From NCBI RefSeq assembly GCF_001447785.1, contig NW_015176014.1, forward strand, positions 1-64,000: a stretch of 64,000 nucleotides of DNA, written 5' to 3'. A program made the translations under genes and the position numbers. Shown here piece after piece: positions 11,893 to 56,010 of this stretch (its first letter is position 1; each line of letters opens with the position of its first letter). This DNA is from Gekko japonicus. Lineage: Eukaryota. The notes beneath the pieces are model-generated. The model saw only the letters and a program-made list of their open reading frames with translations. It was not told the origin of the DNA and ran no database searches.

Positions 11893-12090
11893 TCAGTACA
11901 CAGGTGGAGGCTGGTAGCCCTCTGAGTCCTCTCTCGTGTGAGTGAAGGGTGGCTGCTGGTAGCTTTCATGGCTGACGTTTGGATAGCTTGAGTAGGGGGT
12001 TGCGGGATCTGGAGCAGGGTCAATGTAACTCTGAGCAAAATCCTGCACACCCATGCGGTAGCGTTGAAGTGCAAAAGTGATCAGGAGCCC
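11893..12090 (-). CDS. SYNGR2: SYNGR2 last coding exon
   Basis: GLLITFALQRYRMGVQDFAQSYIDP...YQPPPVY*. Confidence 0.97.
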   Translation of the reverse strand, partial: GLLITFALQRYRMGVQDFAQSYIDPAPDPATPYSSYPNVSHESYQQPPFTHTREDSEGYQPPPVY

Positions 12091-15000: not shown

Positions 15001-17065
15001 GCACGCCCTGCCTCTCCCGGCCCTGGGAGGAAGCTGAGAGTGGAGGAAGGGACGGAGCCAGACACTCTACTGGGAAGGGCTGCCCTTGCTGGGGAGGAGG
15101 GAATCTCCCCCCAATTTAATTAGCTGGCGGGGGCCTGGCCCCCTCAAAAAAAACCCCTAGCCACGGGGCTGGCTCTCACAGGCACCAGGTCAGATCCAAA
15201 CACATACATCATTCTGACAGCAAGACAAGGGCAGCCACTTGGAGAAGGAGAGCTTGGAAAGAGGAGGCGCAGCAGCACAAATGCACAGCCTTTTAATGTG
15301 TTGCTTCAGTTCATTCCTTTGAGCATCAAATACCTGAGAAGCCCAAGTCAGCCATAACGAGGTACTTGCGATCAGTGGCACTGCTAATCTGTGGGAAGTA
15401 GGCATCAACCATGAAGAAGAATACACAGGCCAGGAAGGCAAGCACACCAATTCCAATGCCATAACGACAGGCATCCTCGCTGTGGTTAAAGACGCAATAG
15501 AGCTGTGGCGAACTAGTATTGTTGGTGTAGCCTTCCCCAATGATGCAGGAGAAAACTATGAGTGCAAACACCTGCAAAGAAGAATACAAAGCTAGCACCT
15601 TCCACTGTGAAAGGAGGAAATTCAAGAGGGGCACAACCCAACCAGGATGGAGTATGAAGCCATTATCAATTCCCACCAAACGCCCAAGTTCCAAGCACCT
15701 AGGTAAATATTACTTTTGCAAGATTCTCATGTGTCTGCCCAAACTGGAGTTCTGCAGTAGTATGGAGACATAGGAAGCAAAAGCGACTGAAGGTGTCTCC
15801 CCAACAAAACTCAGAAGGCTACATAATACTTAAAGCACCATCTGAGGATTCCCTTAAACAAATTTCCCTTTGAGGGGGGGGGGGGAATCCCTCAAGATTT
15901 ATGTTAAGGCTTCCCGAACACAAAGCAGGCCCCAAATGAACCACTGTTGTCCTATCTATCAGTCAACAGCTAGGCATACTTCCTGTACTGAAAAAAAGGA
16001 TTGCTGAGGCAGATCAAATATAAGCACGACAAAAAGCAGAAGTGCCAGCACAGCAGATGCAAAAAGCACCTTGGAGAAACAGGAACTCCAGGGTTTGGAG
16101 CTTGACACAACTTAGCTGCTGCCCTATTCCTCATCGTCTACGGAAGCACTGATGGATCCCCCCAAGACTAATAACTGTAAGCGCCTAGCAGCAGGGCAGA
16201 CGCCCTCGTAATATGAAACCTAAACCAGACTCACATGCCAGTCACCAGCTAGTAAATAGGCGCTGAAAGGAGTCGCCCCCGCCTCCTTCACCCCTTGCCC
16301 ATCAGCTGACACCCACATGACCAGGTTGCGCCTCAGCCCTCACCTAAAGCTATGGCCTTTATTAGGTTTTTAATCCACCACCACCCCCCAACGCGACGAC
16401 ACTTTCACATTCAGGGCGCCATACGAACCAAGCCTAGCTCTGGAAAGGCGCGTAAGGGCACCTCCGTCTCCACATCTGAGCCCTCAGCGAGGCTAGCCGG
16501 TGGGGGCGCCAAGGGAGGCTCCGGCCAGCGCTAACTGAAGCGCTCGGCCGCAGGTACTTTTCAAACTACCTAAACTCCTCCTAGCAGCGGCTCGGGAGAG
16601 GCCTCGATCAAGTCCAGCGCCTCCCAGGGCTGAAAGTTTCCTCTAGCCCAGCGTCCAGCGTCCAGCAGATGGCCTCAAACAGCGGCGCATGACACTGAAG
16701 CGCTTCAGCTCGGATACGCCACCCCATGTAAGGGTGGCGGCACAGGTGCCGGATTCTATAACGAGCCCTCCCCTCCAACGTAATGGTCCCTCGTCGTCTG
16801 TTCCTGGCACACCTGAACCAGCCTAGCCAACTTTTTCCCCCTCTCTTCCGCGCCAAGCAAAAGGGAAGGCGCACCAACTCCACTCGGGAAAGGGGGAAGC
16901 AGAGTGAGACGGCCTCTGTCGCCCCAACCGACCGACCCACCTACCTAACCCTCCACTCACCGCGCTCAGAATGCGCACCACCACCTGTGGCTGCTGCAGA
17001 AAGCGCCACAAGTCAAAGGTGCCGCCAGCCTTACTGGCTCCGTAGGCACCCCCACCACTCTCCAT
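11893..17065 (-). CDS. SYNGR2: Synaptogyrin-2, spliced CDS (4 exons, 681 nt, 226 aa)
   Basis: Exons 17065-16961, 15571-15334, 13994-13855 and 12090-11893. MARVEL-domain protein MESGGGAYGASKAGG...EGYQPPPVY, tail-to-tail with TK1 as in mammals. Confidence 0.97.
13168..13495 (-). mobile_element. Sauria SINE
   Basis: tRNA-like head, GAGCTCCCGT/CCTAGCAG body motifs, (ACCTTT)n tail. Confidence 0.85.
13855..13994 (-). CDS. SYNGR2: SYNGR2 exon 3
   Basis: LWTFLWFIGFCVLTNQW...ARASIAFSFFSIFSW, 140 nt. Confidence 0.97.
14152..14285. repeat. 38-bp minisatellite, ~3.5 copies
   Basis: Unit TTCACTCTCACATGCTAAGCCCCAGGTGACGGGCATTC starting at 14152, 14190, 14228 and 14266. Confidence 0.95.
14753..15171. mobile_element. 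Non-autonomous DNA transposon (hAT-like)
   Basis: TIR CAGGCCCGTAGCTA / TAGCCACGGGGCTG, 8-bp TSD GCTC(C/T)CAC. Confidence 0.7.
15334..15571 (-). CDS. SYNGR2: SYNGR2 exon 2
   Basis: VFALIVFSCIIGEGY...DRKYLVMADLGFS, 238 nt. Confidence 0.97.
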
Positions 17066-17340
17066 GATTCTGATGCTTCTTTCCAACACCCGCCCGGCCC
17101 GGAACTCGCTGTAGCCGCCTCGCCCAAATTTGTGCCTGCGCGTCCGCAAGCTCCGCCTCCAGGGAGGAGACCTAACCCGAGAGCAAGCGACGGGTGGCTG
17201 CGACGTTGCGTGCTCTCCCGACCGAGTCGAGGTCCCTGGGCAGTGCAGGTGCTGAGTGGTTTGGTTTGCGCCCCGTCCTCCTTCCCATCAAGAACAGGCA
17301 AAACTGAGGCAGGCGTCCGGTCCGTTAACGGTTAGGCTTC
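16400..17340. promoter_or_regulatory. SYNGR2 CpG island / promoter
   Basis: High CpG density spanning exon 1 and its upstream region. Confidence 0.7.
16961..17065 (-). CDS. SYNGR2: SYNGR2 coding exon 1
   Basis: MESGGGAYGASKAGGTFDLWRFLQQPQVVVRILSA, donor GTGAGT. Confidence 0.95.
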
Positions 17341-19225: not shown

Positions 19226-22200
19226 AGGGCCAGCCTGAGGTTTTTTTGCACTCTAGGCGGGGCTACCTTCTGGCGCCCCCCCTGCACATGCCCAAGTATG
19301 CGGTTGCCAACCTCCAGGCAGGGCCTGGAGACAAAAAAGTCCCCCCCCCCTCCACCAAATGGCAAGCCAGGGACTCAAGGGGGAAGCTGTTCTGTTCCCT
19401 TCTCTCCCCCCCCCCAGCAAATTATAAACACCCCCCTCTCTCCGTGCCATGGAGTAACTTGAGGGTGAAGGAGTGGGACTGATATACACTGGTGATGAAG
19501 GAGGTGTACATATAACAGAATCTGTGGGTTTCCAAGGAAGGGGGATTAGGCATCGTGAAAGAGGCTGGGGCTCTTACAGTGCAATCCTATGAAGACTTAC
19601 TCCAGTCTAAACCAATTTATTTTAACAAATTTAGCAAACTGGAGTAACTCTGCACAGGATTGCACTGTCATGGTTTTGTCTCAAATTCCCACTGGGTTTC
19701 TCCCCCTCTCCCCTATCCTGTCACTCTGTGACAGCAGCCAAGAGAGAGGTTTCATAATTTTTGGGAGGTTTCACAATTTTTGTGGAATCCCACCTTCCCC
19801 TGGTGGAATTCCTTCATACTCCCACATGACTCCTTCTGAGCCCCTAGAGCTTTCAGGAAGTCCACCCCCCCCCCCCCCAAGCACCCATCTCCCTTTTCCC
19901 ATTCTTCTAGTGTGTTGGGAAGCACCCAGGGAGTTTGTCTTAACATTACAGGCAAAGATATACAATTCTAAAGAAATAAAGATAAACACAAAGAATATAG
20001 CTAACCTAACTCAGACTAAAATTACCTGGCTCTCCCACTTGGGTGAAAAAGAATGGGTGGAGAGAGAATGCTGTCTCTTCATACTGTAAGTCAGTCTCTC
20101 TCTCTCACACACACACACTTTTCAGACTGACGAGCTGCTTTTCAATTCTTTTATTCCTGGTTACCTCCATGGTCAGGTGACCACTCTTCTTAGAGATCCG
20201 AATTTCTGATGGCTACCCAAACTAGTTAGCTAACCACAGTGGCAGTGATCTGTAAAGAGAAACAGCTTGCTCTGTAAAGAGAAACAGCTTGGCAAGCCGG
20301 CCCTTGGACAAGCCAGGGAAGGCATGGGGAGGCATTTAAATGCCTCCTGCCCAAAAATAGCCCTGGGAATAAGTATCCATGGTCAATTTGACACTGTAAT
20401 GTAGATGGCATGATTTTTGTTCAGACTGAGGAAGCTTGACACTCAAGGTCTCCTCCAAAGAACTCAGGGAACTCCTGTTGCCAACCACTGTGAAAGGAAA
20501 AACCTGTCTAGAACATAGATGTAAAAACAGATGTATAAATAGAACCAATTCCATAATCTAATTCATCTGTTATCTCGCTCAGAGATCCTCAATGCTGTTG
20601 AGCTTGTGGACACTTCTGAAGTTTTAAAAACCGTGAATGGGCACCACAACAAAGTGGCTGCCATGCGGGTCGGGGCCAATCTTAAAATATTGTGAAGTTC
20701 CAAGCCCACCTATGATGAAGACAACTGTCTCCAAATGGGGGCTTCCTACAAACACAAAGATGTTGTCTCCTGGGCTTTTCTGAAACACTTACTGTTTCAG
20801 TGAGGTACAGGGTACAGAAGATCGGGAATGGCCCTTTGCTATAAGGAAGGAAGGAAGAAATGGGTCCCAGGAAACAGGGTGGCAGGTACCATGGCACCAC
20901 AGCTTTGTGTCGGAGATCACTGATCTAGATATTACACTATGCTCTAGCTACTGGCTTCTCATGTAGGAACTTTGTATTGCCCAGGACATAACTCTTTTTA
21001 AAACTGCACTGTTGGACTAGGGAAACAGCAGACAGGAAAGGAGCTGAACACCCCTTTCCCAACTGGCCCACCCCACCAGTAGATTCTAAACGAACTGGAA
21101 TTTTACAGAGAGTAGAATTTTTCCTTGTCACCATGATCCAGCCGTGAGGTCACTGCTTCCTAATAGTGATACTGTAAACATCCTAAGGATAGGGCTGCAT
21201 GCAGAGTGTGTGATTGGCAGCTTTCCAGTTCATTAAGTGGACCTAAGCAACACAATATCTACTGATCCCTGGGCATTATTTCCATGTCTAGTTATAGCTT
21301 TTATAGAGCTCCTTATACAGGGTACAACTCAGAGGCAGAAGTGAAGATTCCAAGGTGATTCAGCAAAGGGTCAGACTCTGCTAACAGAAAACTCTGCTAA
21401 CATCAGCAGAGCCTAGAAGGCCTTGTTGAGCTCCATAGGAACAAAACTTATCAAGGTAGGATTTCGGGTGGGGGTGGGGAAACAAGTGAGGAAGGAAAAC
21501 CACAAAGACAGACATCACTGGTCTGATTTACTATGCAAAATCAAAGACAGCAGCTGAAGTTTCATGATCACAGTGGCACTAAAGAGGCTGGCGAGCTTGG
21601 ACGTCTCCTGCCTACTCACTCTTTACAGACAGCCAGAGACATTAAGAGCCACAATGGGACAGCAGCTGGAACTGCCCTGTTTGCGTATCCATGTCTGTGG
21701 GGAGGGACAGAGATTATTTCCTAGTCAAAGGGCTCCTTCTGGTTCAGAAAATTCACAGACAATCATCCCATACATTGTCATCTGATAGGTTTGTACAGAA
21801 ATGGGATCTGGATGGCTAAACGTCCACCTCTACAGGACTTGCATTCAGTCACACTGCACATACTGAATTTTCTTTCTATTACACCAAGCACAGCACTGAG
21901 ATTAAACTGAATCACAAGGGCTGTCGTGACATAGGGCTGAGTTTTACAAGTTTGCATGGGTCCTGGAAGGAAACAAAACAGTTTGATGGCACTAAGGGAG
22001 GGAGGAGTATCACCCCAGAGAGGTGTGCAAGAACGGTTGTTGTGTCAGATTTCGGTGGGCATAGGGTTCTTATGAAATCCTAATTCTAAGCACACTGGTA
22101 GGATACTGGTGTTGAAAATGGAATGGGAAAAATAAGCTTGCACAGGCTTTTATTGTTTTCTTTTCTTTGTATTCAGTATTACTTCATCCTTCTCCCCAGA

Positions 22201-23323
22201 GCTACTCAAATATGTAACCCAATCAAACTCCTGTGCCTGATTTCCAAACACCTGATTGCTTAAGGACTAAGGTGAACTATTATCTCACAGTGCCTTATCT
22301 TCTTGAAGTTAGTCATTCCTAACAGTCTATTGTCTGTGGACCTGCAACATGCTGTAGGTTACAAGGAAAATTCAAACAAAGTGGGGAGCAGTCCAAGAAA
22401 AGTTACTTGCTGATCAATGGAACCAGGTGACAGCTTTCATGTTGCCTATGTAAAATGTAAATTGGCTTGTTACAGAGAAGGTGCTCAAGGTCAGGACCGC
22501 CCAGTCTATGACTTGGGCCCATTCCCCAAATGCAGGAATATATATACATGCATGCACTCACTCCTCTACACCCACCCACAATAAGCACAGAGCCCCAGGT
22601 CAGCCATATACATATTATATATGAATATATTTAGTACAACCCATTCCCTCTGATATTTGACACACAAAATACATTCAACGTGATTTCTTTTAAATGACCA
22701 AGACATTCATGATACAGATAGTGAACCAACTGCTTCCTTGAGGACTGATGGCACGCTCCACCTCAGTAGGTTTTAAATATAGAAAATACTTTTTTTTCTT
22801 ATGTCAGTATCATAAGCATGAATATCTTTATTAACATGCACATTGCTCCCAAAATAGCACCATTTTTAGTATACAGAAGCAGGCTTGCTACTTGTTCCAG
22901 CGTGACACTGGCCCAAGGGACGTTATTAGGTACATAATTCAGTACACAGGCAACGTGTACACACAGTAAGAAAAATAGACATTATACCTATAAAAAGATA
23001 CAGATCAAGGGTATGATAGATGCAGGAGCCAGTTTGCCCACATCACAATGAAGCCTTTCTCTGTATAAAAATTCAACCATGGAAAGGGGATTCTCTGGCT
23101 TCTTACTGCAAGTAAATTCTGGCCATTCTGTGCTCTTTGCCCTCTTCAGAAGCAAATCCAAAAAGCTGTGAAACCTAGCATCACAAAGATCCAAAAGCAA
23201 ATTCCATTAGGAAAGACATTATCAAAAATTGCCAAAATATATAAACTCTATTTCACAATTATAACGATGGTGGTGTCACAACATCAAAATAAGTGCATAC
23301 TATAACTATAAGCAAAGAATACA

Positions 23324-24380
23324 ATTAGTTGCTGTAGATTTTCCGGGTTGTGTGGCGGTGGTCTTAGTATTGTAGAACTTGACGTTTCACCAGTAGCTGT
23401 GACTGGCATCCTCAGAGGTATAACACAGAAGGATGGGGTACTATCTGCATCAAGGTGAGAAGAAAAATGGTAGGCAGGTAATTTATATCTACTCCAGAAG
23501 GTGGGGTAGGGCTGAGTCATTATCTTGTAGGAGTTCCCCAGGCTATGAACGTGCTAATGGAGGAGCTTTCCTGAGGAGATTCTTTTGTATATGGATTGTT
23601 TCTTCAGGAGGTTTCCTGTTTCCTGAGGAGGTTCTTTTGTATGTGGATTGGCTGTCGAAATTCTAATCTTATCTGTAGTACTATTGTCAGATGTAGAGCC
23701 TTTTGTGTTTTTCAGGACAGGAAACCATGCCCTATTTATTTTTAAGTATACTGCATACCATGCAGTTGTGGACAAGTTTACATTGGGACCACACAGCGTA
23801 GCATTCAGACAAAAATAAAAGAACATGAAAGACACTGCAGACTTGGCCAATCAGAAAAATCAGCAGTGGCTGAACATAGTGTGTCCTGTTTGAGTTAGGC
23901 TATTTTGTTCCAAGACACTGAAAGGCTGGACAAGCTACCATGTCAGATCACACAGGGAAGCCACTGAAATTCATAAACATAAACACAATTTCAACAGGAA
24001 AGAAGAGAGTTTAAAAATAAATAGGGCATGGTTTCCTATCCTGAAAAACACAAAAGGCTCTACGTCTGACAATAGCACTACAGATAAGATTACAATTTCG
24101 ACAGCCAATCCACATACAAAAGAACCTCCTCAGGAAACAGGAAACCTCCTGAAGAAACAATCCATATACAAAAGAATCTCCTCAGGAAAGCTCCTCCATT
24201 AGCACGTTCATAGCCTGGGGAACTCCTACAAGATAATTCCCACACTTTCTGGAGTAGATCTAAATTACCTGCCAGTCATAGTTACTGGCGAAACGTCAGG
24301 TTCTACAATGCCAAGACCACGGCCACACAACCTGGAAAATCTACAGCATCTAATGAACTTGTGAAAGCTTTCGACAACAC
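23324..24380 (+). mobile_element. 5'-truncated Penelope-like element with inverted upstream pseudo-LTR
   Basis: From 23746 reads VYCIPCSCGQVYIGTTQRSIQTKIKEHERHCRLGQSEKSAVAEH (GIY-YIG endonuclease), then HREATEIHKHKHNFNRKEESLKINRAWFPILK. The 3' end is duplicated in inverted orientation at 23324-23745. Confidence 0.9.
23377..23419 (-). ncRNA. Minimal type I hammerhead ribozyme motif (Penelope-associated)
   Basis: Minus strand reads ACCT-CTGAGGA-T-GCCAGT cacagct ACTGGT-GAAAC-GTC-AAGT: intact core boxes, 6-bp stem II, GUC cleavage triplet, stem I with one mismatch. Confidence 0.65.
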
Positions 24381-24381
24381 G

Positions 24382-24702
24382 TAGAATACAATGTCTCCTC
24401 CTTCAAAGATAAATATTACTCCATGTAGTCCATTCAACTTAGTAGGAGGAATCCTTGTTTTCAAAACGATTGACTCTTCACACTATGAACTTTGTTGTCA
24501 GGAGAAACTGTTGAAATCGGGTTCCAACTACGCTGCCAGCAAACTGAAGAAGTTGATGGAAACGTCTTCTTTAAGTATCTGGAACAGGCGTTTTTGTGAA
24601 GGCTATTTTTGAAAATGTTTTGAAAACGTGGATTCCTCCTGTTAAGTTGAACAGACTACATGGACTAATATTTATCTTCGAAGGAGGAAACATTGTATTC
24701 TA
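24382..24702. repeat. Nested ~85-bp-arm inverted repeat (MITE-like)
   Basis: TAGAATACAATG...GGAATCC (24382-24454) pairs imperfectly with GGATTCC...CATTGTATTCTA (24630-24702). Confidence 0.8.
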
Positions 24703-25333
24703 TGCCTTGTTTATAATTATAGTATGCACTTATTTTGATGTTGTGACACCACCATCGTTATAATTGTGAAATAGAGTTTATATATTTTGGCAATTTTTGA
24801 TAATGTCTTTCCTAATGGAATTTGCTTTTGGATCTTTGTGATGCTAGGTTTCACAGCTTTTTGGATTTGCTTCTGAAGAGGGCAAAGAGCACAGAATGGC
24901 CAGAATTTACTTGCAGTAAGAAGCCAGAGAATCCCCTTTCCATGGTTGAATTTTTATACAGAGAAAGGCTTCATTGTGATGTGGGCAAACTGGCTCCTGC
25001 ATCTATCATACCCTTGATCTGTATCTTTTTATAGGTATAATGTCTATTTTTCTTACTGTGTGTACACGTTGCCTGTGTACTGAATTATGTACCTAATAAC
25101 GTCCCTTGGGCCAGTGTCACGCTGGAACAAGTAGCAAGCCTGCTTCTGTATACTAAAAATGGTGCTATTTTGGGAGCAATGTGCATGTTAATAAAGATAT
25201 TCATGCTTATGATACTGACATGGAATTTGCTTTTGGATCTCTTCGAAGCAAGGCAAATTTTCCAGTTGTTGTCATATCACTATAGGCCTTTCACAAGAAG
25301 TTCCTTTCCTCTTGAGGACTTTCCCCACCAAAC

Positions 25334-25396
25334 TCATGGAAGATTCACCAGTTGCAAAGTCAGTTTCTTTATCAGGCACCATTTTTCCTGGACGCA
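25334..25396 (-). CDS. TMC8: TMC8 last coding exon
   Basis: CVQEKWCLIKKLTLQLVNLP*, compare mammalian QVQEKWHL. Confidence 0.88.
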   Translation of the reverse strand, partial: CVQEKWCLIKKLTLQLVNLP

Positions 25397-28392
25397 CTAG
25401 ATGGATGCAAAGGAGAGATGGATTGTGTTACACAGACTGAGCACAGAACATCAACCAGTGTGACAACGAGTCACAGGTTATTTGAGATACAATGATGTAT
25501 ATTATTATAGATCAGCTCTGTAATACCTAAGGACCACTCACCTGTACTCGTTGCTTCTTGAGCCTTTCAATCTCTTTTCTGTTTGCTTGTGCCTGAGAAA
25601 TGTAGACAGTGAGGATGAGGCTGTGGAAGAAGAAGAAGAGATTGGATTTATACCCCACCTTTCACTACCTGAAGTAGTCTCAGAGCGGCTTACAATCTCC
25701 TTTCCCTTCCCCTCCCCACAACAGACACCCTGTGAGGTAGGTGGAGCTGAGACAGCTCTTCTGAGAACTGCTCTTGAGAGAACAGCTCTGAGAGAACTTG
25801 TGACTGACCCAAGGTCACACCAGCAGCTTCATGTGGAGGAGTGGGGAATCAAGCCCGGTTCTCCCAGATTAGTGTCCATGCTCCTAACCACTGCACCAAA
25901 AGGAAGAAACCATCATACTAATGACAACAGTTCTTGGAGTTTTTGGCTCCCACTCAACCATCTCAGCAGAGAAGGAAACAGTGGTTCCACTTTAGATCTT
26001 AAGAATGTGGTTGCAAGAGCTTGCTTCTAGATATATTCACAATTAAATTGTAAAAAAATAAAAGTCTGCTTCACAGCATTTGTAGTTATGGATTCTCTTT
26101 GTCCTGCTGATACTATCAAGGCATCAAATTGGTAATAAGATGAACTGGTGGATGCTTATGGTGGTGGATGTTGTGGAGGTTTGTTATGTATGAACTGGTA
26201 GATTTTGTGGAGGTTTGTTACACCCATAATATACTTTTAAAAAAGAGTCAGGGGTCAGGATTGCTACAGCAACGGTACTCCTAAACCATTCACTACAATG
26301 TCAGCAGAATTACCACCAATAATAATGGGCTCTTGGCAAGGCTCTGACATTTTCTAGAACATCTGTAAACTGGATTTTCAAACATGGCTCTTGATAGGCA
26401 CAGTTATAGTTAGTAGTCTTTCTGTAATTTTAAAAAAAGATGATTTCTTTCCTTTTGGTTGCCTGGATTCCACTGGGGCTATAATCCAACACAGTATGTA
26501 CACTTAAACCGAGGGAAGTCAATTATTTTGCTTTGCCTGTTCTAGAAAGAGTTTGAAGCTAGGACATAGTTCTTGGAGAGGGGAGCATTTCTTGTTCCAA
26601 TGGTCACTATAATTCAAAGTGGATGGTCTGAATTAAGTCCCAAGTGAGCAAGAGGACAAAACATGGCAACCAAGTTTAATCACTTCAGTGTGTCATTTTT
26701 CTTCGGTGACAGGCCAATGAGCGACAAGTAAGCCTACTTTGGTTAATAAGCTTTTAGCAGGCCACATATTGGGTTGGTCAATGTGCAAAACTAGCAAGTT
26801 GCTCAGAGATATAAGTGGTCCAGAAGCATGATCTCATGTAGCCTGAAACACAAGATCCAACACTTATCCCTTATTCCAAATGTCACCTCTGCAGGGAGGA
26901 TCCAGGTGCGACCAACCCCCTCCACCACCACCTCCAGGTATTCTAACTATGCCTCGAATGGGACTCACCTGAGCAGCATCAAGAGTAAGAAACAAAAGAC
27001 ATTGGATGTGGCATAATCCAAAACAAGCATTGCTGAGGTAGATAGGTGGGACATAGCTTTAGGCACTGCCTGCCAAGGAGTTGAATAGTTCGCAAACAGC
27101 CCGCATGGCTGGGATGGGCGGATACTGGAACAGAAAACAGCGACTGTCAATGAAAGGTTTTACAAGCTTTATCCCTAAGAGTGAAACCCCAAGCACTCTA
27201 AATCCATTGACATCAATGGGTTTAGAAGTAATTCTCTTTAGGATTACGCTGTAAATTGTTTACTTCTAAATCTTCCCTCAACTTACCTGCTGATGACATA
27301 ACCCAGAGACATGCAGGCCAAAAACAGGCCTAGCAGTAGCATAATCTGGAAGAGGAATTTAGAATGGGATGCTCGAAACAGCTGAGTTGAAGGCTGGCAG
27401 TTCTGGAACAAAGTGTACTGGGGTGGGAGAAAGAGAGCAGTTTTACACACGGTTTTGGAGCACAGGTAATCTCTCCTCACTAGGAGAGATGAAAGTCGTG
27501 AGGTTTAACAGGATGAGGACCCTGTGTGCCAGCCTAGCAACCAGGAAGCTAGGAAAGAAGAAGAAGGAAAGATAGAGAAAGGCTGTGGTGAGGAGTAGTG
27601 GTTTCTTCACCCTACTTCCCCATCATCCTGGGATCCAGCCAGCAGCCTCAGTTTCCATGAGAGACATTTCTGCTTAACCACAGACAGATTCAGGGCCACA
27701 ACTCCTGTTTATATAATGCCAAAGTTCTCCATCACCAGCAAGTGTTGAGATACTACCCCATAACGCCCTGAGGGTGGTTTATTGGATGTGGAGGTCTACT
27801 AATCCCTCCTACGGATGTGTCCACACTGCTGGAACTGGGGGCGGAGGGGGGGGGGAGTTGCTTTCTCAGACGCATGCAAGCTAGCAACAATGGAGTCATA
27901 CACAGCTGAAAACTAGACGAGGCTGCCGCAAAGTGAGGACCATTTTTGGATGTTGTCTGCTGAGCTGGGAGAGACAACACTCCTTTCCATATTTCTCGTC
28001 TCCATCTATGGAGTGCTACTACTGGGGAAGGTGGCCACACTGATATAAGAGATGATAAGTCCATAGTTCCTTTGCTAGGATCAGGCCACCTCACTCGCAA
28101 GCCAAAAGGGCTGGGGACTCCATTTAGGGTTGTGCTCAAAACCCACTGGTATCCTCTTGTAGTGTGTGCTCTTTAAACATTTTAAACAAACAGAGAGAGT
28201 CTTTACCTTTTTTATATAAAATGTAAGGAAAATGACAACACATCCAAGCAAAGGCAGGAGAGGACAAAAGAAGATCCCAGTCCATATGACTGTTTGAGCT
28301 GCTACAATATCCAACACATTGTGAGGAACCAGGAATTCTTCTTTGCCAAGCCAGTGAGCCAGTGCACAGGATGAATGCTTAGCTAACAGCCT

Positions 28393-28424
<32 letters not shown>

Positions 28425-31400
28425 GGGGGGGTGTCATAGCAGGACAGCATGCAGCTGCCTACCTAAGCTATTATTTTGGAAGAGACCCACAGTAATGTAT
28501 TCTGGCAATACATCTTGCTTTAAAAGTGCTCTGCAGTCAGCAACAAGGAAATGACAGCTGACCCAAGACTATCCTTCCATACCACCCAGCATTACCAGAA
28601 GCTAAGCTAGTGACATAGAAGATCTATCATGTAATACTTCCAAAGGATAGGAGTGCCCTACCCACTGATGACAAGGAAGACTACTTGCCTGGCCTTTGAT
28701 AGGCTGGCAGTCAAGGAAACCCTAGGATAGATGAACACCGGTGGTGATCTTTTGTCTTACCTCCGCGGCAGACTGATAAGGAAGGCGAACGCCAAGGTGG
28801 TCAAGAAGCTGAAGACAGTCATCTTATACATTTCCTGTCCAATGTGAGTTTCCCAGCACTGTAGGCACAGTAGAACAAAGTGACTCACACAAGAAATGCT
28901 ATTTCTAGGCATGTTATGCTATGTCAATATAATATGCATAGACTGGCACATAGAGTTATTGGGTTTTTAAAAACTAAAACTCACAGTGTACTTGTGCAAT
29001 ATCATTTTATAAGTGCTGATGGTACAAGGACAGCATATGTTTGCCTCTTACTCCAATTCTATGGAGAAAATTAATGCTTGGTTTTAATTTTATTCAAGGT
29101 GGGCATTTGTAATGAATTAAGACAAAAAAATCAGACAGTTTTAATGGCTCATGATTAACCAGGATTTCCTTATTGCAAGAGGACAGTCACTCAGAACTGT
29201 AGTCAAACAAGAAGTCCTAGGTAATTTGGAACCAATACAACAAGTGAAAAAAGACACAAATGTCCAAGAAAATGGAATGCCAAAAGATATCAGACGGGTG
29301 AAAGAGCTGCTGTTAAAAATCTCAAGTCATATTTGCTGGCTGGATATGCAAAGGACTAGTGTCATCAAGGAAAACTAACTCACTGTCATATAGATACCTC
29401 ATTTCAAGAACATTTCATATCAGAACACATTATTACTTGGCACAATTTGCTCCGAACAGAAAACATGCATCCTGATTATCCTGTGCAACTCCAGTCACCT
29501 GATAGAGTTTGTTGTAACCACATAGCTGGCACTGGGGAGAGTTTCTGCTCCCTGTGCACAGGACCCTGTGGCCCAGGAAGAACAGGAATATTCCCAGGGT
29601 GGACAGCTTCAAGGTCATACACCTGTAAGACAGAAGACACTACACTTTACACACAGGGTCTACAATTCTGTCCAACCACTTAAACCATATATGCTAGGTT
29701 CTGAGCACCTGACTGTGAGTGGATATCAATGACCATTTTGCCACATATTTACCACCCATGATCTGCAACTAATATCTGCAGCTGAATCTCTTTACCACCT
29801 GGCAAGGTGATACACACAACCAGCTTACCAAGTGGTTACCACGATCACAATGAATTGTTACACAGTATTAGAGTGCTTAATCACATGTTACAAAGTCCCT
29901 GTGTCCCCTGTATATCTGCTATGGTCCTGTTGACAGGAGTTCTGTGCTCAGCATTTAATTCCCATGCAGGTATTGGCCCATGGCACAGAGGATGCTACCC
30001 CCTGTGCCTTTTTCTCCAACTGGAAATGCCACAGGGAGTGGTTATGTCTGCATAGGCCTTCTGAATGTCTCCATCCACTCTGTCTCTAGTCCACATAACA
30101 TATCAGGGTTAGGCAGACTAATCTGAGGGCTGTAATTTGTAGAAGTCATAGATTAGGTGCTAGGTCTCTCTGTCAGGAAATTCCTGAAGACCTTAAATAC
30201 AAGCATCTGATTCCTGGCGTTGTTTTTATTTTGATCTGTATAAATCAGATGTTAATCCATCTCAGGTGAACATAAGGTTGTGAAGACTACATACTCCCTA
30301 AGAGCTGTGAGGCAAAAGCGAACAGCGAACCGATCAGACCGACGAAGAAAGAGGTCTTTCCAACGCGGCGGTAAGAAAGGAACTGGCGGGATGCCCGCGC
30401 CCACCCCTCTGGGCATGCGCAGTGGGGTTCCTGCGCATGCCCGAGGGACTGGGCGCAAAAATCCGTTAAAAGAGCTTGCTACAGCACCGATCGATCCAGC
30501 GCGTGCGCACTGAATCCCATGGGTGTGAAGCACAGAGACCACGTCGAAGATCATAAGGTTGTGAAGACTACAATCTTGAAATTAATTGAAACTTTGGTAT
30601 ACTATAAGATGATGGGGATGCATAAAGGAACAGATGGATAAAGGAGACATCTCCTATTTCTCAAAGAAGTTTTTAAAGGAAATTAGCTCTGTCATTTTTT
30701 TAAAAATGGGAACTTTATGCTAGGCTAGAAATAAAGTATAAATTACAACTTCCATTAGAAGAGGAAGATTCAGCCTTCCAAATCAGGGTTCTTTTCTGGG
30801 GGAATGCGCCAGAATGGAGTTCCAGAACCTCTTTGACAAAATTCTTTTTAAAATGTTTAAAAAGTTCATTAGTTTTCAGTATACAGATTGGAAACCTCAT
30901 TTCCTTCTTGAGAGTTCTGGCACCTCTTTTTTTAAAAAACACACAAAAAAACATCCTGTTCCAAATTAACTAATATACCACAATCCTTATGAAGAAGCAT
31001 GATTTGGATGGGTTTTCTAAAGTCCCAGATTGAGTAAACTTGAAATCAACACACTACAGAGATGGACAGCCATGAGTTCTCAGCATTTGAATCATCAAGG
31101 TATGCACCATTAATCCCATAATAATCACATGCAAGAAAGTTTGGCAAACAACTGCCCTCTTCCATTTTTATTTGTATACTCATGCTAATCTCCAATTGTG
31201 CAAAAATCCAAAGATTTTAATTGGTCACAGGCCCATCTTGTGAAATACATTAGTAGATAGTGGTAATCAGATGCTATTTCAGCTGGATGATTCATTTTAT
31301 TGCTTTACTGAGCTACAAAACACTTTTCAAATTGCCTAATTCTGACTCTGTGTGCAACTTTTTTCTCTGCAGCCACACATGTAACTGTCAGGTGAGGACC

Positions 31401-34400
31401 CATCGCATATGTCTGATAATGAAAATTCTTGCTGTGATAAAAAGGTGTTATTTTTAAAGGTGCCACAAAACTCCTGTTTATTTTTGATTCAACAAACCAA
31501 CATTTAGCACTTAAAAATCTCTAAAAGCCCTGAATCATTTAAATGTTCTAAGGTATATGCCTAGACCAGCCGTGCCAGGCAAAATTAGACACAGCTGAGG
31601 GGAAGGCGTCATTTAAACCTCTCTCTTCAGCTCCTGCAAGTNNNNNNNNNNNNNNNNNNNNNNNNNNNNNNNNNNNNNNNNNNNNNNNNNNNNNNNNNNN
31701 NNNNNNNNNNNGGTTGGTATTAATATTTTTTTCAAAAGTTTTGGCATTAAAGTTTCCTTTAATCACAAAAACATATACAGTCCTTTCTATAAACACTGAA
31801 ATTAGGTAAAAAATAAGCATAGCATTAAAGTGTCACTACGTTCTTATCACAAACAGATAAACATGTATATATGTAGAAAAAGGAACCAGAAGGGATGTGA
31901 AAGATTGTTTAGTCTTTTCTCATAAGGAAGGGGCTCCTACCTCTTGCTCATTTCACTGCTGTAATATCCTTTTTGAGATATATCAATGAGAACTGTACAT
32001 AATACTCCAAATGTGGATGCACCATGTTTCTATACAAGAACATTACAACAGCAGTAATTTTGTTTCTATCCCCTAGAGATCCAGCATGTTGTAGTGGTTA
32101 AAACTGGCAGATTCTAATCTGGAGAATGGGGTCTGATTTCCCCCCCCTCCACATGAAGCCTGCTGGGTGACCTTGGGCCAGTCACAGTTCTCTCCGAACT
32201 CTCTCAACCCCGGCTACCTCAGAAGGTGCCTGCTGCTGGTAGAGGTAGGGAAGGAGATTGTAAACCACTTTTAAGACTCCTTAGAGAAAAGCGGGGTATA
32301 AAATCCTACTCTTCTTCTTTCCTAATAATGCCTTAACCTAATTTGTCATTTTGTTATTCGTTCACATGCTTTGGAAAGATCTTGCTGGAGCTCTTCACAG
32401 TCTATTTACATCATACTGAAAACCACGGTGTCATCTGCCATTGTGGCCAGTTTGCTGCTCATACTTCATTTCAGATAATTCATGTACAAATTTATGTAAA
32501 TAGCACCAGTCCCAATACCAATCTCTGTGGGGCCCCACTACTTATTTCTATTGCCAGAACTCTCCATAGCAGTCCCACTTTTTGCTTCCCTCCTTTTAAC
32601 CAATTTCTATTTTGTGCAGTTATTCGGGACAGTTTTTTTAAAGAGGTTTGTCGAATGTTCAAGTATATAATGTTTTGTTCATTGTGGATAAAGCGGTTGG
32701 GAGGGAATTATGTATTTATTTACTTCCAGAACACTCAAAGTGGTTTCTAAATAAATACTGTAATACCCTAATCAAAAATCTCATAACAGTTAAAAACCAG
32801 CAGAAAAAACACTGCCCTAAACTGTTGTTTGAATTGTAAGTGAGAAGATGGATTTCTGTCTGCCCAAAGCTTTGCTTGACTTCAAGAGTATCAACCTCTC
32901 CTTGATTGTTCACAGTTTTCTCTTAATCTGTCATGGGCTAACTTGTACATCCTATTTTAGGGAAGTGAAACCTTTAAACTAACACCACAAAGTCTGTAAG
33001 CTCTTCCTCCCTGTAAACTCTTCTTGCCACAAGAAATATCTGTTGCCACTGAGGTCGGAAGCACCTACCTGACTAGGGTGAGGTTAACTTCAGTGTTGGG
33101 AGAGCAGCCCTCCAACTGGGCCAGAGCATGGAAAAGAAAAGGCAGGAGAACATTCGCTATGGAGATAACCAAGGGTGGCAGGTACTGGTTCACTACACTG
33201 GAGCTGGAAGCATCTTGCTGAGAACAGAGAAATCAGAGATAATGGTATACTTATGGATATGGGATGTTTCTATCACAGTTACATCTCCCAGAACCCAGGG
33301 ACTTTGTCCCAGTGAGACTCCTGTTCGAGAATTAACTTGGCCATTCATTGCATGGTGACCCTACGTGCAACAGTATAATCACTTGTGGAAGGTAATCTAT
33401 CCTGCCTGCACACCATGAGGATCCAAGTGGCTGGTTTAGCATATGACCACAATTCACTACTTTCTGTCCCACAGCCTGTAAGTGAACTAGCATGAAGGGC
33501 AGTTCAAGTAAACTGCCTGTTAAGGAGTTGGCTCTCAGGGATCTGGAGGCTGGAGGTTATTGGGGGTATAACTGAGTGAGCTATCCAGAACTACATGAGT
33601 GCTCAAGTCTCAAAGCTCTTCTCAGGTACAGCAAGGGAAAAAAAGGGTGTGCAGCACTGACCACTGCAATCGGCAGCCAATGAAAAGCCCCTACCTACAT
33701 CGGTCAGCCCTGGTATACACTCAAAGAGCTCAAAGTCCCTGATCCAGCTCTGGCAGCTAACCTTCTGCCTTCTCCTGCAGCATCTTCTGGCTGTTACATA
33801 GGAGGCTGTCAGGTCTCGGACACAGTTACTCTCACCACAATCTTGTGTCAGCAAGATTTGTTTATTGAGAAGTGAAACAGGTTCCAAGCGTGGACAGATT
33901 ATGTGTCAGAACCAGCTGTCTGGCATTCACATGATCTACCAAAACCCACTCATTGTGACTGGGGTCAAAATCACGCCATTTGATTAAGGAATACAGACAG
34001 CCCAACATGATTTTAGAGTCCAAAATTTCCTCCACCACCCCCCCCAAAAAAATCCTCCACCACCTGGTGGAGCTCCCCATTCAAATATACAACAACAAAT
34101 GTACAGCACACAGTAACAAGTAGCAAAGAATAACAAAACCACAACAAACAACTGTGAGCTGAATTTCCCACAGAATATTCACAAAGGAGACTTCATTTAA
34201 AGTGAAATGCATCTATTGTCTGAAGTAAATCACCATACAATCCATCACAGGAATATGCAGAAGCCAAAGAACTGATATACAAGATAAATATACAAAAACT
34301 CCATAAATATACAAAAAGTCCATAAATATACAAGAAGTCCAACACTTTTCCTAGGTAATTTTTCCAGTGTTTCAGACCTCTGGTCCTTCCCCAGGACCTG

Positions 34401-55001: not shown

Positions 55002-56010
55002 TAGAATCATAGAGTTGGAAGGGATCTCCAGTGTGATCTAGTCAAACCCCCTGCACAATGCAGGAAATTCACAAATACCTCCCCACACACCCTCAGTGAC
55101 TGCTAATCCACGCCCAGAAGATGACAAAAAACCTCCACGATCTCCAGCCAAACTGGGCTGGAGAAAAATTGCTTCCTGACCCCAACATGGCGATCAGCAT
55201 TTCCCTGGGTGTGTAAGAAAGGGCTACAAGAACTAAGCACTGAGGCAACCCATCCTATCCTCCCTCTCATGTTCTGCCTAAGTTCACAGAATCAACAGTG
55301 CTGTCAGATGGCCATCTAGCCTCTGTTTGAAAACTTCCAAAGAAGGAGAGCCCACCACCTCCTGAGGAAGCCTGTTCCACTGAGGAACCTGTTCTGTCAG
55401 GAAGTTCTTCCTAACTTCCAGTTTGGTGTAGTGCCAGTTTGGTGTAGTGGTTAAGTGCATGGACTCTAATCTGGGAGAACCGGGTTTGATTCCCCACTCC
55501 TCCACTTGTACCTGCTGGATGACCTTGGGCAAGCCATAGTTCTGGCACAGCTGTTCTTGAAAAAAAGGGCAGTTTCTGTCAGAGCTCTCTCAGCCCCACC
55601 TACCTCACAGGGTGTCTATTGTGGGGAGGGGGAGGGAAAGGAGTTTGTAAGCCACTCTGAGACTCCTTTGGGTAGTGAAGGGCGGGGTATAAATCCAATC
55701 TCCTCCTCCTCCTGCTTAGCTGAAAACGAAAACTCTTCTGATTTAATTTCAACCCATTGGTTCTGGTCCAGCCTCCTGGGGCAACAGAAAATAACTCCGT
55801 ACCATCCTCTATATGACAGCCCTTCAAATACTTGAAGATTGTTATATCACCTCTCAGTCATCTCCTCTCCAGGCTAAATATACCCAGCTCCTTCAACCTT
55901 TCCTCATAGGACTTGGTTTCCAGACCCCTCACCATCCTTGTTGCCTTCCTCTGGACACGTTCCAGCTTGTCTATATCCTTCTTAAATTGTGGTGCCCAAA
56001 ACTGAACACA
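55002..56010 (-). mobile_element. CR1 LINE 3' portion, interrupted by a SINE
   Basis: QWNRLPQEVVGSPSLEVFKQRLD and KGCHIEDGTELFS motifs; (TGATTCTA)-type tail. Confidence 0.85.
55434..55712 (+). mobile_element. Squam3-like SINE (young subfamily) inside CR1
   Basis: Same diagnostic sequence as the 36250 and 43211 copies; 16-nt head duplicated. Confidence 0.88.

What the first reader, a model, noticed from the sequence alone, without database searches (positions are those of the whole stretch)
22801..25333. Penelope-built ~2.4 kb palindrome directly behind the TMC8 stop codon: a candidate long-dsRNA 3' UTR
Seen: the right arm ends at 25221, about 110 nt past the TMC8 stop (25334, minus strand). 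Roughly 850 bp of arm sequence can pair. The central 265-nt loop (23746-24010) is the GIY-YIG remnant of a Penelope-like element. Scanning by eye, the first minus-strand AATAAA after the stop is at 23735-23740 and the next is at 22827-22832, near the far end of the left arm. Established: Penelope-like elements form inverted pLTR structures; long 3' UTR hairpins are substrates for ADAR, Dicer and Staufen and ligands for MDA5/PKR; human TMC8 (EVER2) restricts beta-papillomaviruses. Inference: use of the distal poly(A) site would make the mRNA fold back into a very long duplex, so alternative polyadenylation could switch dsRNA-based regulation on or off.
Basis: partly seen in the sequence, partly recalled or inferred. 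Interest (0 to 1): 0.8.

Follow-up and report, generated by a model that had tools for sequence, protein, structure and literature searches.

The report
Nested transposon palindrome behind a TMC gene
The 2.4-kb palindrome is in the assembly 113 bases past the stop codon of a TMC-family gene, but only its inner 1 kb was made by a Penelope-like element, its perfect outer 505 bases were not seen in independent DNA data, and no RNA data show it is part of the mRNA, so it is an ordinary pile-up of repeats until shown otherwise.

Summary
In detail: coordinates, arm lengths, the GIY-YIG loop, the stop codon and both minus-strand AATAAA sites are as described.

"Penelope-built" is only partly right. 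The palindrome has three layers:
- An older hairpin-type repeat E, about 90 copies per genome, with arms about 85% alike.
- A Penelope-like head-to-head pair (23326-24354). It carries a one-sided 28-nt tail and a 10-nt target-site duplication, and it sits in E's left arm. Cutting it out restores a seamless 605-nt arm alignment.
- A 505-nt stretch that is 100% identical (22801-23305 / 24717-25221). It copies E's left arm plus 373 nt of low-copy flank onto the right side. It rejoins by 2-nt microhomology next to a leftover E terminus (25220-25253).

This youngest layer supplies the 506-bp perfect helix. Contigs of another DNA run of the same species, and of a related species, do not show its right junction. 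It may be polymorphic or an assembly error.

The 3'-UTR reading is untested. Two RNA runs gave almost no reads on the gene's last exons. No AATAAA or ATTAAA lies between the stop and 23740, so read-through is plausible. Poly(A)-site choice gating inverted-repeat dsRNA is already published for human Alu pairs.

The scan noted a similar Penelope-seeded palindrome elsewhere in this genome (s1-818665). Interest is low to moderate.

The parts
25334..25396 (-). Last coding exon of the TMC-family gene (CVQEKWCLIKKLTLQLVNLP*), stop TGA at 25336-25334
   Evidence: Frame translation. AG acceptor at 25398-25397 and upstream donor CAG|GTGAGT at 25542/25541 read. TMC domain PF07810 on the same strand at 28081-28437.
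25222..25333 (-). 112 nt between the stop codon and the palindrome, single-copy. Holds none of 14 poly(A) hexamer variants.
   Evidence: hexamer scan. (X1 contig of single-copy depth 71.5 over 25220-25652).
25220..25253 (.). t*: leftover old terminus of hairpin repeat E. 85% like the arm-internal terminus 24815-24848, with the first 21 nt identical. It overlaps the arm end by the 2-nt 'AT' microhomology.
   Evidence: Direct repeat D1 and inverted pair I8; BLAST.
24717..25221 (.). Right outer arm: 505 nt, 100% identical to the reverse complement of 22801-23305. Read as the recipient copy of a recent inverted duplication or conversion. 24849-25221 is low-copy sequence (U); 24717-24848 is E's right arm.
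   Evidence: 0 differences in 505 columns, then 16 differing columns in the next 100; contigs of X1 and X12 stop matching at 25220.
22801..23305 (.). Left outer arm (donor). 22801-23173 is low-copy flank U'. It ends, on the minus strand, 21 nt after AATAAA and just before an A-rich run. From about 23166/23174 on it is E's left arm.
   Evidence: an X1 contig of 2276 nt runs 21600-23195 with 1 mismatch and no break at 22801..
24393..24848 (.). Hairpin-type repeat E, right-hand portion: inner left arm 24393-24467, loop 24468-24616, right arm 24617-24848. Its outer left arm is about 23174-23325. About 80-100 copy equivalents in the genome.
   Evidence: Inverted pair I3, 94 nt at 87%. Seamless arm alignment after removing the PLE block. 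X1 depth 5855-6875 against a baseline near 71. Sub-threshold Rfam MIR2646 hit, 33.9 bits against a cut-off of 245, taken as hairpin resemblance only.
23326..23745 (-). PLE copy L (sense on the minus strand), 5'-truncated. Holds the ORF C-terminus (LKINRAW...KLLH*) and a 3' region with a hammerhead core.
   Evidence: X1 depth up to 1.79 million, about 25,000x baseline.
23746..24354 (+). PLE copy R (sense on the + strand), 5'-truncated inside the GIY-YIG endonuclease. 23746-23895 is the GIY-YIG N-terminal half. A stop and frameshift follow, then REATEIHKHKHNFNR...KLLH* to 24199. Its 3' region lost the CUGANGA box through a 68-nt deletion flanked by TGCC.
24355..24382 (+). 28-nt one-sided extension ('tail') beyond the point where copy L ends
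   Evidence: alignment of the two 3' ends. The feature is described in PMC8557442, PMC3846280 and PMC11167929.
23316..23325 (.). Target-site duplication AGAATACAAT, left copy. The right copy is at 24383-24392.
   Evidence: junction views. Exact 10-nt match at both edges of the inserted block.
24383..24392 (.). Target-site duplication AGAATACAAT, right copy
23381..23415 (-). Minimal hammerhead core CUGAGGA / 6-bp helix II / GAAAC / GUC, in sense with the TMC gene
   Evidence: the only such core in the 64 kb. No Rfam hammerhead hit at E<=1. PLE min-HHRs act as dimers, and single motifs are inactive in vitro (PMC4209133).
23735..23740 (-). First canonical AATAAA after the stop (1.6 kb downstream). 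It lies in the coding sequence of PLE copy L (K-I-N codons).
22827..22832 (-). Second AATAAA, 21 nt before the outer end of the left arm, with a U-rich stretch downstream

Best explanation
The palindrome is a three-layer accident of repeat biology just downstream of a TMC-family gene (probably TMC8). Nothing shows it to be a regulatory device.

Layer 1 (oldest): a hairpin-type, moderately repeated element E lay about 80 nt after the stop codon. Its arms were about 230 nt and are about 85% alike in the 100 unconverted columns.

Layer 2: a Penelope-like element inserted into E's left arm. It inserted as the head-to-head pair of 5'-truncated copies that these elements typically leave, because their endonuclease/RT cuts and extends both target strands. 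It left a 10-nt target-site duplication and a 28-nt tail at one end.

Layer 3 (youngest): a break in E's right arm was repaired using E's left arm as an inverted template. The new end was rejoined by 2-nt microhomology next to the old E terminus. This gave 505 perfectly identical bases on both sides.

Shown: the anatomy, the copy numbers, the identity steps, and the restored empty site.

Inferred:
- The repair mechanism and the order of events.
- That transcripts of the gene probably run into the structure, because no canonical signal precedes 23740.
- That only those ending at the distal signal would hold both arms.

Whether any such RNA exists is unknown.
For: -: removing 23326-24392 gives one continuous 605-column arm alignment. 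The first 505 columns have 0 differences and the next 100 have 16. The same 10-mer AGAATACAAT sits at both edges of the removed block.
- the loop is a GIY-YIG remnant, and its relatives carry an RT domain upstream.
- the two PLE 3' ends align to a common end, and one goes on for 28 nt.
-, depth against a single-copy baseline near 71: the PLE part is up to about 25,000x, the E part about 80-100x, and the outer 22801-23175 about 1-2x.
- the 34-nt remnant at 25220-25253 repeats the arm-internal E terminus (21 nt exact) directly after the arm end.
- Literature: inverted 5'-truncated PLE copies and a 30-40 bp one-sided tail (PMC8557442, PMC3846280). Both-strand cleavage and extension by a lizard PLE protein (PMC11167929). 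Inverted repeats as seeds of inverted duplications with microhomology junctions (PMC4352052, PMC7467729).
Against: - The template-switch step is inferred from the end product only.
- The copied tract ends exactly where a minus-strand poly(A) site would cut (21 nt after AATAAA, before an A-rich run). A DNA-templated model does not predict this.
- The boundaries of E rest on 197-nt depth bins, one contig end and the t/t* repeat. No target-site duplication of E was found.
- Divergence between the two PLE copies is uneven: 2% in the ORF tail and about 10% near the ribozyme. This needs two different RNA templates or CpG decay.
- 'No function' is a default, not a result, because RNA evidence is missing.
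Confidence: 0.62

Rival explanations
1. One reading: the palindrome is part of the TMC8 3' UTR, and choice between the proximal (23735-40) and distal (22827-32) poly(A) signals switches a very long dsRNA on or off. This would feed ADAR, Dicer, Staufen, MDA5 or PKR pathways.
For: - No AATAAA or ATTAAA lies between the stop and 23740, and no hexamer variant lies in the first 184 nt.
- The distal isoform folds into a 506-bp perfect helix plus 144, 53 and 28-bp helices, at -1792 kcal/mol. The proximal isoform keeps only an 87-pair imperfect hairpin.
- The same logic is documented for inverted Alu repeats (bioRxiv 10.1101/2023.11.30.569399; review PMC11263572).
Against: - There is no RNA support. 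X21 had depth 0 and X22 at most 0.76 over 25146-25539. The few reads in unique parts match the intronic background.
- The reads on the PLE core carry other copies' letters at the two best-supported variant places (23379: 306 of 321 reads in X21; 23603: 263 of 272).
- The perfect outer helix is the youngest layer and was not seen in a second DNA data set of the species or in a relative. It cannot be a conserved regulatory feature.
- Weaker signals (AGTAAA 24911, TATAAA 25033 and 24958) could end transcripts inside the right arm.
Confidence: 0.07
2. The outer, perfectly identical right-hand copy (24717-25221) is an assembly error, or a private or heterozygous structural variant of the sequenced animal. 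The species' usual allele would then have only the older E hairpin with the PLE pair.
For: -: an X1 contig (same species label) runs from the left flank through 22801 to 23195 without the fork that a second, inverted copy joined to a different flank must create in a k-mer graph.
- the X1 contig from the right flank stops matching at 25220 and has 34 letters unplaced.
- the contig of the related organism B also stops matching at 25220 and goes on for 86 unlike letters.
- Identity of 100% over 505 nt fits a very young event or an artefact.
- PLE tandem and inverted structures are known to trouble assemblies (PMC8557442).
Against: - The join at 25221|25222 is a non-homologous 2-nt microhomology junction in the interior of a scaffold with conserved gene order. 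Assemblers do not invent this without reads.
- The retained t* remnant and the homology-bounded inner edge look like a real repair product.
- Logan contigs are filtered and drop variants, so a missing junction is weak evidence.
- For the X1 contig, which end the 34 unplaced letters lie at is my reading of the table.
- It is unknown whether X1 is the assembled animal.
Confidence: 0.3
3. The right outer arm is a reverse-transcribed copy of the 3' end of a minus-strand transcript that ended at the distal poly(A) site. It would have been primed at the broken end next to t* and resolved by homology in E. It would then be a fossil record that the distal site is used in the germ line.
For: - The copy starts exactly 21 nt after AATAAA, where cleavage is expected, and has the polarity of that RNA.
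- The inner junction lies in homology.
- The genome is rich in active-looking PLE sequence.
- The lizard PLE enzyme starts reverse transcription without homology to the cut DNA (PMC11167929).
- PLEs can mobilise host sequence (PMC3846280).
Against: - There is no A-tail between 25221 and t*.
- The donor's A-rich run is genomic.
- The coincidence of one end point is thin evidence.
- A DNA template in cis is simpler.
Confidence: 0.08
4. The whole 2.4-kb palindrome arose in a single PLE insertion whose RNA carried transduced host sequence, as 'Penelope-built' would mean literally.
For: - Head-to-head copies are the usual PLE outcome.
- Host DNA capture next to pLTRs is described (PMC3846280).
Against: - The PLE block has its own target-site duplication, and its removal restores E's hairpin seamlessly.
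- Three sharply different identity levels (100%, about 98% and 89%, about 84-87%) do not fit one event.
- The outer arm is low-copy.
Confidence: 0.03

Closest known systems
Penelope-like element (EN+ PLE) insertions with an inverted 5'-truncated copy and a one-sided tail (PMC8557442, PMC3846280, PMC11167929)
   Same: - C-terminal GIY-YIG remnant, with an RT domain upstream in relatives.
- Head-to-head 5'-truncated copies.
- Hammerhead core in the 3' region.
- 28-nt extension at one end only.
- Short target-site duplication.
- Very high copy number.
   Different: - Both copies are short 3' fragments (420 and 609 nt) with no RT.
- One copy has lost the ribozyme's CUGANGA box.
- The pair accounts for only the inner 1.06 kb of the 2.4-kb palindrome.
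Inverted Alu repeats (IRAlus) and other inverted SINE pairs in 3' UTRs, including their control by alternative polyadenylation (PMC11263572; bioRxiv 10.1101/2023.11.30.569399)
   Same: - Transposon-derived inverted repeat downstream of a stop codon.
- It would give an intramolecular dsRNA only in the long UTR isoform.
   Different: - Transcription through the arms is not shown here.
- The potential duplex is much longer and perfect (506 bp against about 300 bp of imperfect Alu pairing).
- It is lineage-specific, possibly not fixed.
- It is partly made of unique host DNA rather than of two independent repeat insertions.
Inverted-repeat-mediated inverted duplications (template switching, fold-back or break-induced repair with microhomology junctions; PMC4352052, PMC7467729, PMC3907307)
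   Same: - One junction lies inside a pre-existing inverted repeat.
- The other junction is a 2-nt microhomology join.
- The new copy is inverted and identical to the donor.
   Different: - The scale is 0.5 kb, not tens of kb to Mb.
- It is interstitial with no triplication.
- The mechanism is inferred from a single end product.
Foldback or MITE-like hairpin repeats
   Same: E has long terminal inverted arms around a 149-nt loop and about 90 genomic copies.
   Different: - No target-site duplication or family consensus could be established here.
- It is unnamed.

Membership tests
Penelope-like element insertion (EN+) | GIY-YIG endonuclease coding remnant | tested here: met
   - The 50-aa fragment itself has no Pfam hit.
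- It has 1537 relatives at E<=1e-3, best 7.8e-16.
- 14 of 34 aligned relatives hit PF01541, best E 2.1e-6.
- The profile's best PDB match is the GIY-YIG enzyme T4 endonuclease II, a weak match at E=0.042.
Penelope-like element insertion (EN+) | Reverse transcriptase N-terminal to the endonuclease | tested here: inconclusive
   Absent from this 5'-truncated copy. It is present in relatives P0011 (RVT_1 at 85-217, match at 378-425) and P0024 (RVT_1 at 19-106, match at 279-324).
Penelope-like element insertion (EN+) | Inverted 5'-truncated copy adjacent head-to-head | tested here: met
   Copies 23745->23326 (minus) and 23746->24354 (plus) share 227 nt at 98% and their 3' ends.
Penelope-like element insertion (EN+) | 30-40 bp tail at one end only | tested here: met
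   A 28-nt extension at 24355-24382 is present only on the right copy. It is slightly shorter than the published range.
Penelope-like element insertion (EN+) | Target-site duplication | tested here: met
   AGAATACAAT at 23316-23325 and 24383-24392. The empty site is restored on removal.
Penelope-like element insertion (EN+) | Hammerhead ribozyme motif in the terminal repeat | tested here: inconclusive
   The core CUGAGGA, 6-bp helix II, GAAAC and GUC are present on the minus strand at 23415-23381. No Rfam hammerhead match at E<=1. Activity was not tested.
3'-UTR inverted-repeat dsRNA (IRAlu-like) | Both arms lie in one mature transcript | tested here: inconclusive
   RNA runs X21 and X22 gave depth 0 to 0.76 on the last exons and the unique flank. 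No 3' ends could be read.
3'-UTR inverted-repeat dsRNA (IRAlu-like) | Long intramolecular duplex possible | tested here: met
   506-bp uninterrupted helix, 835 inter-arm pairs, -1792 kcal/mol against about -620 for shuffles.
3'-UTR inverted-repeat dsRNA (IRAlu-like) | Clustered A-to-I editing or small RNAs over the arms | tested here: inconclusive
   No locus-specific reads over the arms. No small-RNA data were laid.
TMC8 (EVER2) orthologue | TMC domain | tested here: met
   PF07810, E=5.5e-22, at 28081-28437 on the minus strand. PDB hits are to TMC1 and TMC2 only.
TMC8 (EVER2) orthologue | Orthology to TMC8 rather than another TMC paralogue | tested here: inconclusive
   - The word search returned only unnamed fragments.
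- Support is indirect. A synaptogyrin-like MARVEL gene lies downstream on the same strand (15326-15694; E=1.4e-7, 32.1 bits against a cut-off of 32.8), as next to human TMC8. The human gene order is from my own knowledge.
- The C-terminal VQEKW motif is recalled from memory.
- No tree was built.
Foldback or MITE-like repeat (element E) | Terminal inverted arms and multiple genomic copies | tested here: met
   - Inner arms about 84-87% alike: I3, 94 nt at 87%; 84 of the 100 unconverted columns.
- Terminal 34 nt: t* is 85% like t.
- Depth about 80-100x baseline.
Foldback or MITE-like repeat (element E) | Target-site duplication at its ends | tested here: not met
   No matching short repeat at about 23166/23174 and 25254 (by eye). 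The ends are only roughly placed.

The most novel reading that the evidence does not exclude
A very young, possibly still polymorphic inverted duplication has given one allele of an antiviral-pathway gene (TMC8/EVER2-like) a 3' UTR that forms a perfect 506-bp dsRNA when the distal poly(A) site is used. Carriers and non-carriers would then differ in ADAR/MDA5/PKR-relevant self-dsRNA from this gene. The right arm may be a retro-copy of the distal UTR end, which would prove germ-line use of that site.
Probability: 0.06. Interest if true: 0.55.

Novelty: new member of a known kind. Interest (0 to 1): 0.25.

Why it matters
If the long isoform exists, this would be a non-primate example of a transposon-seeded inverted repeat in a 3' UTR, with an unusually long and perfect duplex, in a gene tied to papillomavirus control in humans. 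As the evidence stands, its value is mainly methodological.

- A palindrome centred on a Penelope-like pair need not be made by that element.
- Identity steps and a restored empty site can separate the layers.
- The most striking part, the perfect outer arms, needs read-level confirmation before any RNA biology is built on it.
- Together with a second note from the same genome (s1-818665), it hints that hairpin-forming repeat pairs may seed local palindrome growth in this lizard genome.

Tried and rejected
- Rfam, permissive scan of 21500-26500: only a sub-threshold plant miRNA-precursor hit on E's hairpin, and no hammerhead family. The hit is rejected as chance or hairpin resemblance.
- Pfam on the 50-aa and 102-aa PLE pieces: no GIY-YIG hit. 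This was solved through relatives.
- BLAST of 22500-25600 against the whole window: no further copies of any layer in the 64 kb.
- Word search with the TMC-domain exon: 16 unnamed fragments. PDB searches: TMC1 and TMC2 only. Neither settles which TMC paralogue this is.
The small 'RNA?' runs holding about 0.3 of the words are probably explained by the high-copy SINE and PLE parts (about 1570 of 5001 nt).
- A single-event PLE origin and PLE 3' transduction of the outer arm were considered and rejected.
- The sense hammerhead as a cutter of the long isoform was considered unlikely. PLE minimal hammerheads need a second copy, and single motifs are inactive in vitro (PMC4209133). The partner copy here has lost its CUGANGA box.
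Full report
**Observation.** The inverted repeat is in the sequence as described.
- The repeat finder and BLAST give outer arms 22801-23325 / 24697-25221 (525 nt, 99%) and inner arms 23519-23745 / 24011-24237 (227 nt, 98%).
- Two shorter pairs (85 nt at 89%, 34 nt at 91%) and a 265-nt loop at 23746-24010 complete it.
- The middle is asymmetric: 193 nt on the left (23326-23518) against 459 nt on the right (24238-24696). The right side has its own hairpin, 24374-24467 / 24617-24710 at 87%.
There is no AATAAA or ATTAAA between the stop and 23740.

**The gene.**
- On the minus strand an ORF at 28081-28437 carries a TMC domain (PF07810, E=5.5e-22).
- The last two coding exons can be read directly. 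One exon ends ...KKQRVQ with donor CAG|GTGAGT at 25542/25541. A pyrimidine tract and an AG at 25398-25397 follow. The final exon, 25396->25334, is 21 codons (CVQEKWCLIKKLTLQLVNLP, then stop TGA at 25336-25334).
- A synaptogyrin-like MARVEL ORF lies downstream on the same strand (15326-15694). From my own knowledge this fits the human TMC8-SYNGR2 neighbourhood.
- Which TMC paralogue this is was not settled. The word search returned only unnamed fragments, and the PDB holds only TMC1 and TMC2.

**The centre is a Penelope-like element (PLE).**
- The loop reads VYCIPCSCGQVYIGTTQRSIQTKIKEHERHCRLGQSEKSAVAEH on the + strand. After a stop and a frameshift it continues REATEIHKHKHNFNRKEESLKINRAW...KLLH* to 24199.
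- Pfam misses the fragment itself. An exhaustive HMMER search finds 1537 relatives.
- Two longer relatives have an RVT_1 domain 160-170 residues upstream of the match.
- 14 of 34 aligned relatives hit Pfam GIY-YIG. The profile's best PDB match is the GIY-YIG enzyme T4 endonuclease II, which is weak at E=0.042.
- The last 60-odd codons of the ORF are repeated in inverted orientation in the left inner arm.
- So there are two 5'-truncated copies head to head: 23745->23326 on the minus strand and 23746->24354 on the plus strand.
- This is the layout described for PLEs (PMC8557442, PMC3846280). It fits the finding that a lizard PLE protein cuts and extends both target strands (PMC11167929).
- The left copy keeps a minimal hammerhead core (CUGAGGA, 6-bp helix II, GAAAC, GUC; 23415-23381, minus strand). 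The right copy lost the CUGANGA box through a 68-nt deletion flanked by TGCC.

**The palindrome is nested, not Penelope-built.** The two PLE 3' ends stop at 23326 and 24354.
- The right one is followed by 28 further nucleotides (24355-24382).
- The same 10-mer AGAATACAAT sits at 23316-23325 and 24383-24392.
- When 23326-24392 is taken out, the left side (22801-23325 + 24393-24467) aligns without interruption to the reverse complement of 24617-25221 over 605 columns.
- The PLE pair is therefore a simple insertion, with target-site duplication and a one-sided tail, into the left arm of an older hairpin.
- That hairpin (E) has a 149-nt loop (24468-24616). Its arms reach out to about 23166/23174 and 24848.

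**Copy numbers agree.** Against a single-copy contig depth near 71 in DNA run X1:

| Region | Depth relative to baseline |
|---|---|
| PLE part | up to about 25,000x |
| 24358-24751 (E) | about 80-100x |
| 22782-23175 (outer arm) | about 1-2x |

A 2276-nt X1 contig runs from unique left flank to 23195 with one mismatch. The outermost 373 nt of each arm (U' 22801-23173, U 24849-25221) is thus ordinary low-copy DNA, not transposon sequence.

**A third, very young layer.**
- In the 605-column alignment the first 505 columns are identical. The next 100 hold 16 differing columns.
- By my arithmetic, a uniform rate would give zero differences in 505 columns with a probability of about 1e-6.
- Directly after the right arm end lies a 34-nt segment (25220-25253). 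It repeats the arm-internal terminus of E (24815-24848): the first 21 nt are identical and the whole is 85% alike. That is the same level of identity as E's old arms.
- My reading is as follows. The old right arm of E ended in this segment (t*). A break in that arm was repaired on the inverted left arm. Synthesis continued past E's end through U' to 22801. The product was joined back at t* by the dinucleotide AT.
- This explains the identity step, the t/t* direct repeat 405 nt apart, the absence of a target-site duplication around the whole palindrome, and the low copy number of U.
- Inverted repeats seeding inverted duplications with microhomology joins are well documented at larger scale (PMC4352052, PMC7467729, PMC3907307).
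- One oddity remains. The copied tract ends 21 nt after the minus-strand AATAAA and just before an A-rich run, that is, at a plausible cleavage site. An RNA-templated version (a retro-copy of a transcript ending there) cannot be excluded, but there is no A-tail at the junction.

**Is the youngest layer real?** raises a doubt.
- In a k-mer graph, a second inverted copy of U joined to a different flank must create a fork at U's outer end. The X1 contig nevertheless crosses 22801 unbroken.
- The X1 contig from the right flank stops matching at 25220 with 34 letters unplaced.
- The contig of related organism B stops matching at the same base and goes on for 86 unlike letters.
- This is what an allele without the right-hand copy would give.
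- On the other hand, the junction has the marks of a genuine repair product and lies inside a syntenic scaffold. Logan contigs are also filtered.
- I put about 0.3 on 'artefact or not fixed'.

**Is it in the mRNA?** This could not be tested.
- About 16 million reads were read from each of two RNA runs of the species. X21 had depth 0 and X22 at most 0.76 over 25146-25539. The handful of reads in unique parts equals the intronic background.
- The heavy coverage of 23176-24357 is on both orientations. At the two best-supported variant places the reads carry other copies' letters: 306 of 321 reads at 23379 and 263 of 272 at 23603 in X21. So it reflects the repeat family, not this locus.
- The runs with about 0.3 of the words probably hold just the SINE and PLE parts. 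I did not lay them.

On sequence grounds read-through is plausible:
- The 112 nt after the stop contain none of 14 hexamer variants.
- The first canonical signal is 1.6 kb away, inside PLE coding sequence.
- Weaker variants (AGTAAA 24911, TATAAA 25033 and 24958) lie in the right arm.

Folding gives the following:
- An RNA ending at the distal site forms a 506-bp uninterrupted helix plus helices of 144, 53 and 28 bp. MFE is -1792 kcal/mol, against about -620 for shuffles.
- An RNA ending at the proximal site keeps only E's 87-pair imperfect hairpin. MFE is -508 kcal/mol, against about -407 for shuffles.

The sense hammerhead between the two sites is unlikely to cut. PLE minimal hammerheads work as dimers and single motifs are inactive in vitro (PMC4209133). 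The partner copy here is disabled.

**Comparison and verdict.**
- The inner kilobase is a regular member of the PLE insertion type.
- The idea that poly(A)-site choice includes or excludes an inverted repeat, and thereby gates dsRNA effects, is established for human inverted Alu repeats (PMC11263572; bioRxiv 10.1101/2023.11.30.569399).
- The outer layer resembles known inverted-repeat-mediated duplications.
- Nothing here is a new kind of system.
- The case would gain interest only if the long isoform and the perfect arms are both confirmed.
- The scan holds a first-reader note of another palindrome seeded on a PLE inverted pair in the same genome (s1-818665, unchecked). That suggests such local palindrome growth, or such assembly trouble, recurs.
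- Interest 0.25; new member of a known kind.

Noticed in passing
window 23381-23415 (minus) and 24236-24300 (plus): An intact minimal hammerhead core lies in sense with the TMC gene in the left PLE copy. The right copy lost the CUGANGA box through a 68-nt deletion flanked by the direct repeat TGCC. In RNA run X21 about 200 molecules on each orientation begin or end at 23473, which is where likeness between the two copies resumes.
   Followed up: partly
window 25540-25933: A SINE next to the penultimate TMC exon is extremely abundant. X1 depth is about 3.3e7 against a baseline near 71, and RNA depth exceeds 2000 on both orientations. Many reads and contigs show 'goes back 113-114' joints at 25739->25626/7, that is, tandem or dimer variants of the unit elsewhere in the genome.
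   Followed up: no
window 22801-22832 (minus strand): The outer end of the left arm coincides with a plausible poly(A) cleavage site. AATAAA is followed 21 nt later by the arm end, then AAGAAAAAAAAG and a U-rich stretch. This may be coincidence, or it may hint at an RNA template for the inverted copy.
   Followed up: partly
window 21600-22781 against 25220-27500: Contigs of related organism B align at roughly 93-95% to the right of the palindrome, but hardly at all (at the 90% threshold) to its left and over the outer left arm. The region downstream of the gene seems to have been restructured in one lineage.
   Followed up: no
window 11893-17300 (minus): A synaptogyrin-like gene. It has a MARVEL-domain exon at 15326-15694, a Tyr/Pro-rich C-terminal exon at 11893-12135, and GC-rich ORFs around 16600-17300 that may mark its 5' end.
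   Followed up: partly
window 49966-51439 (minus): Two long adjacent ORFs (258 and 228 aa) look like the reverse-transcriptase and C-terminal part of a LINE, lying in or near the TMC gene.
   Followed up: no
window 43176-43493, 55284-55835, 25551-26030: The same SINE-derived pseudo-ORF (…EEEEIGFIP.LSL…QQTPCEVGGAE…VEEWGIKPGSPRL…) recurs at least three times in the window on both strands.
   Followed up: no
window 31642-31711 and 37674-37709: Two runs of N (70 and 36 bases) lie inside the TMC gene region.
   Followed up: no
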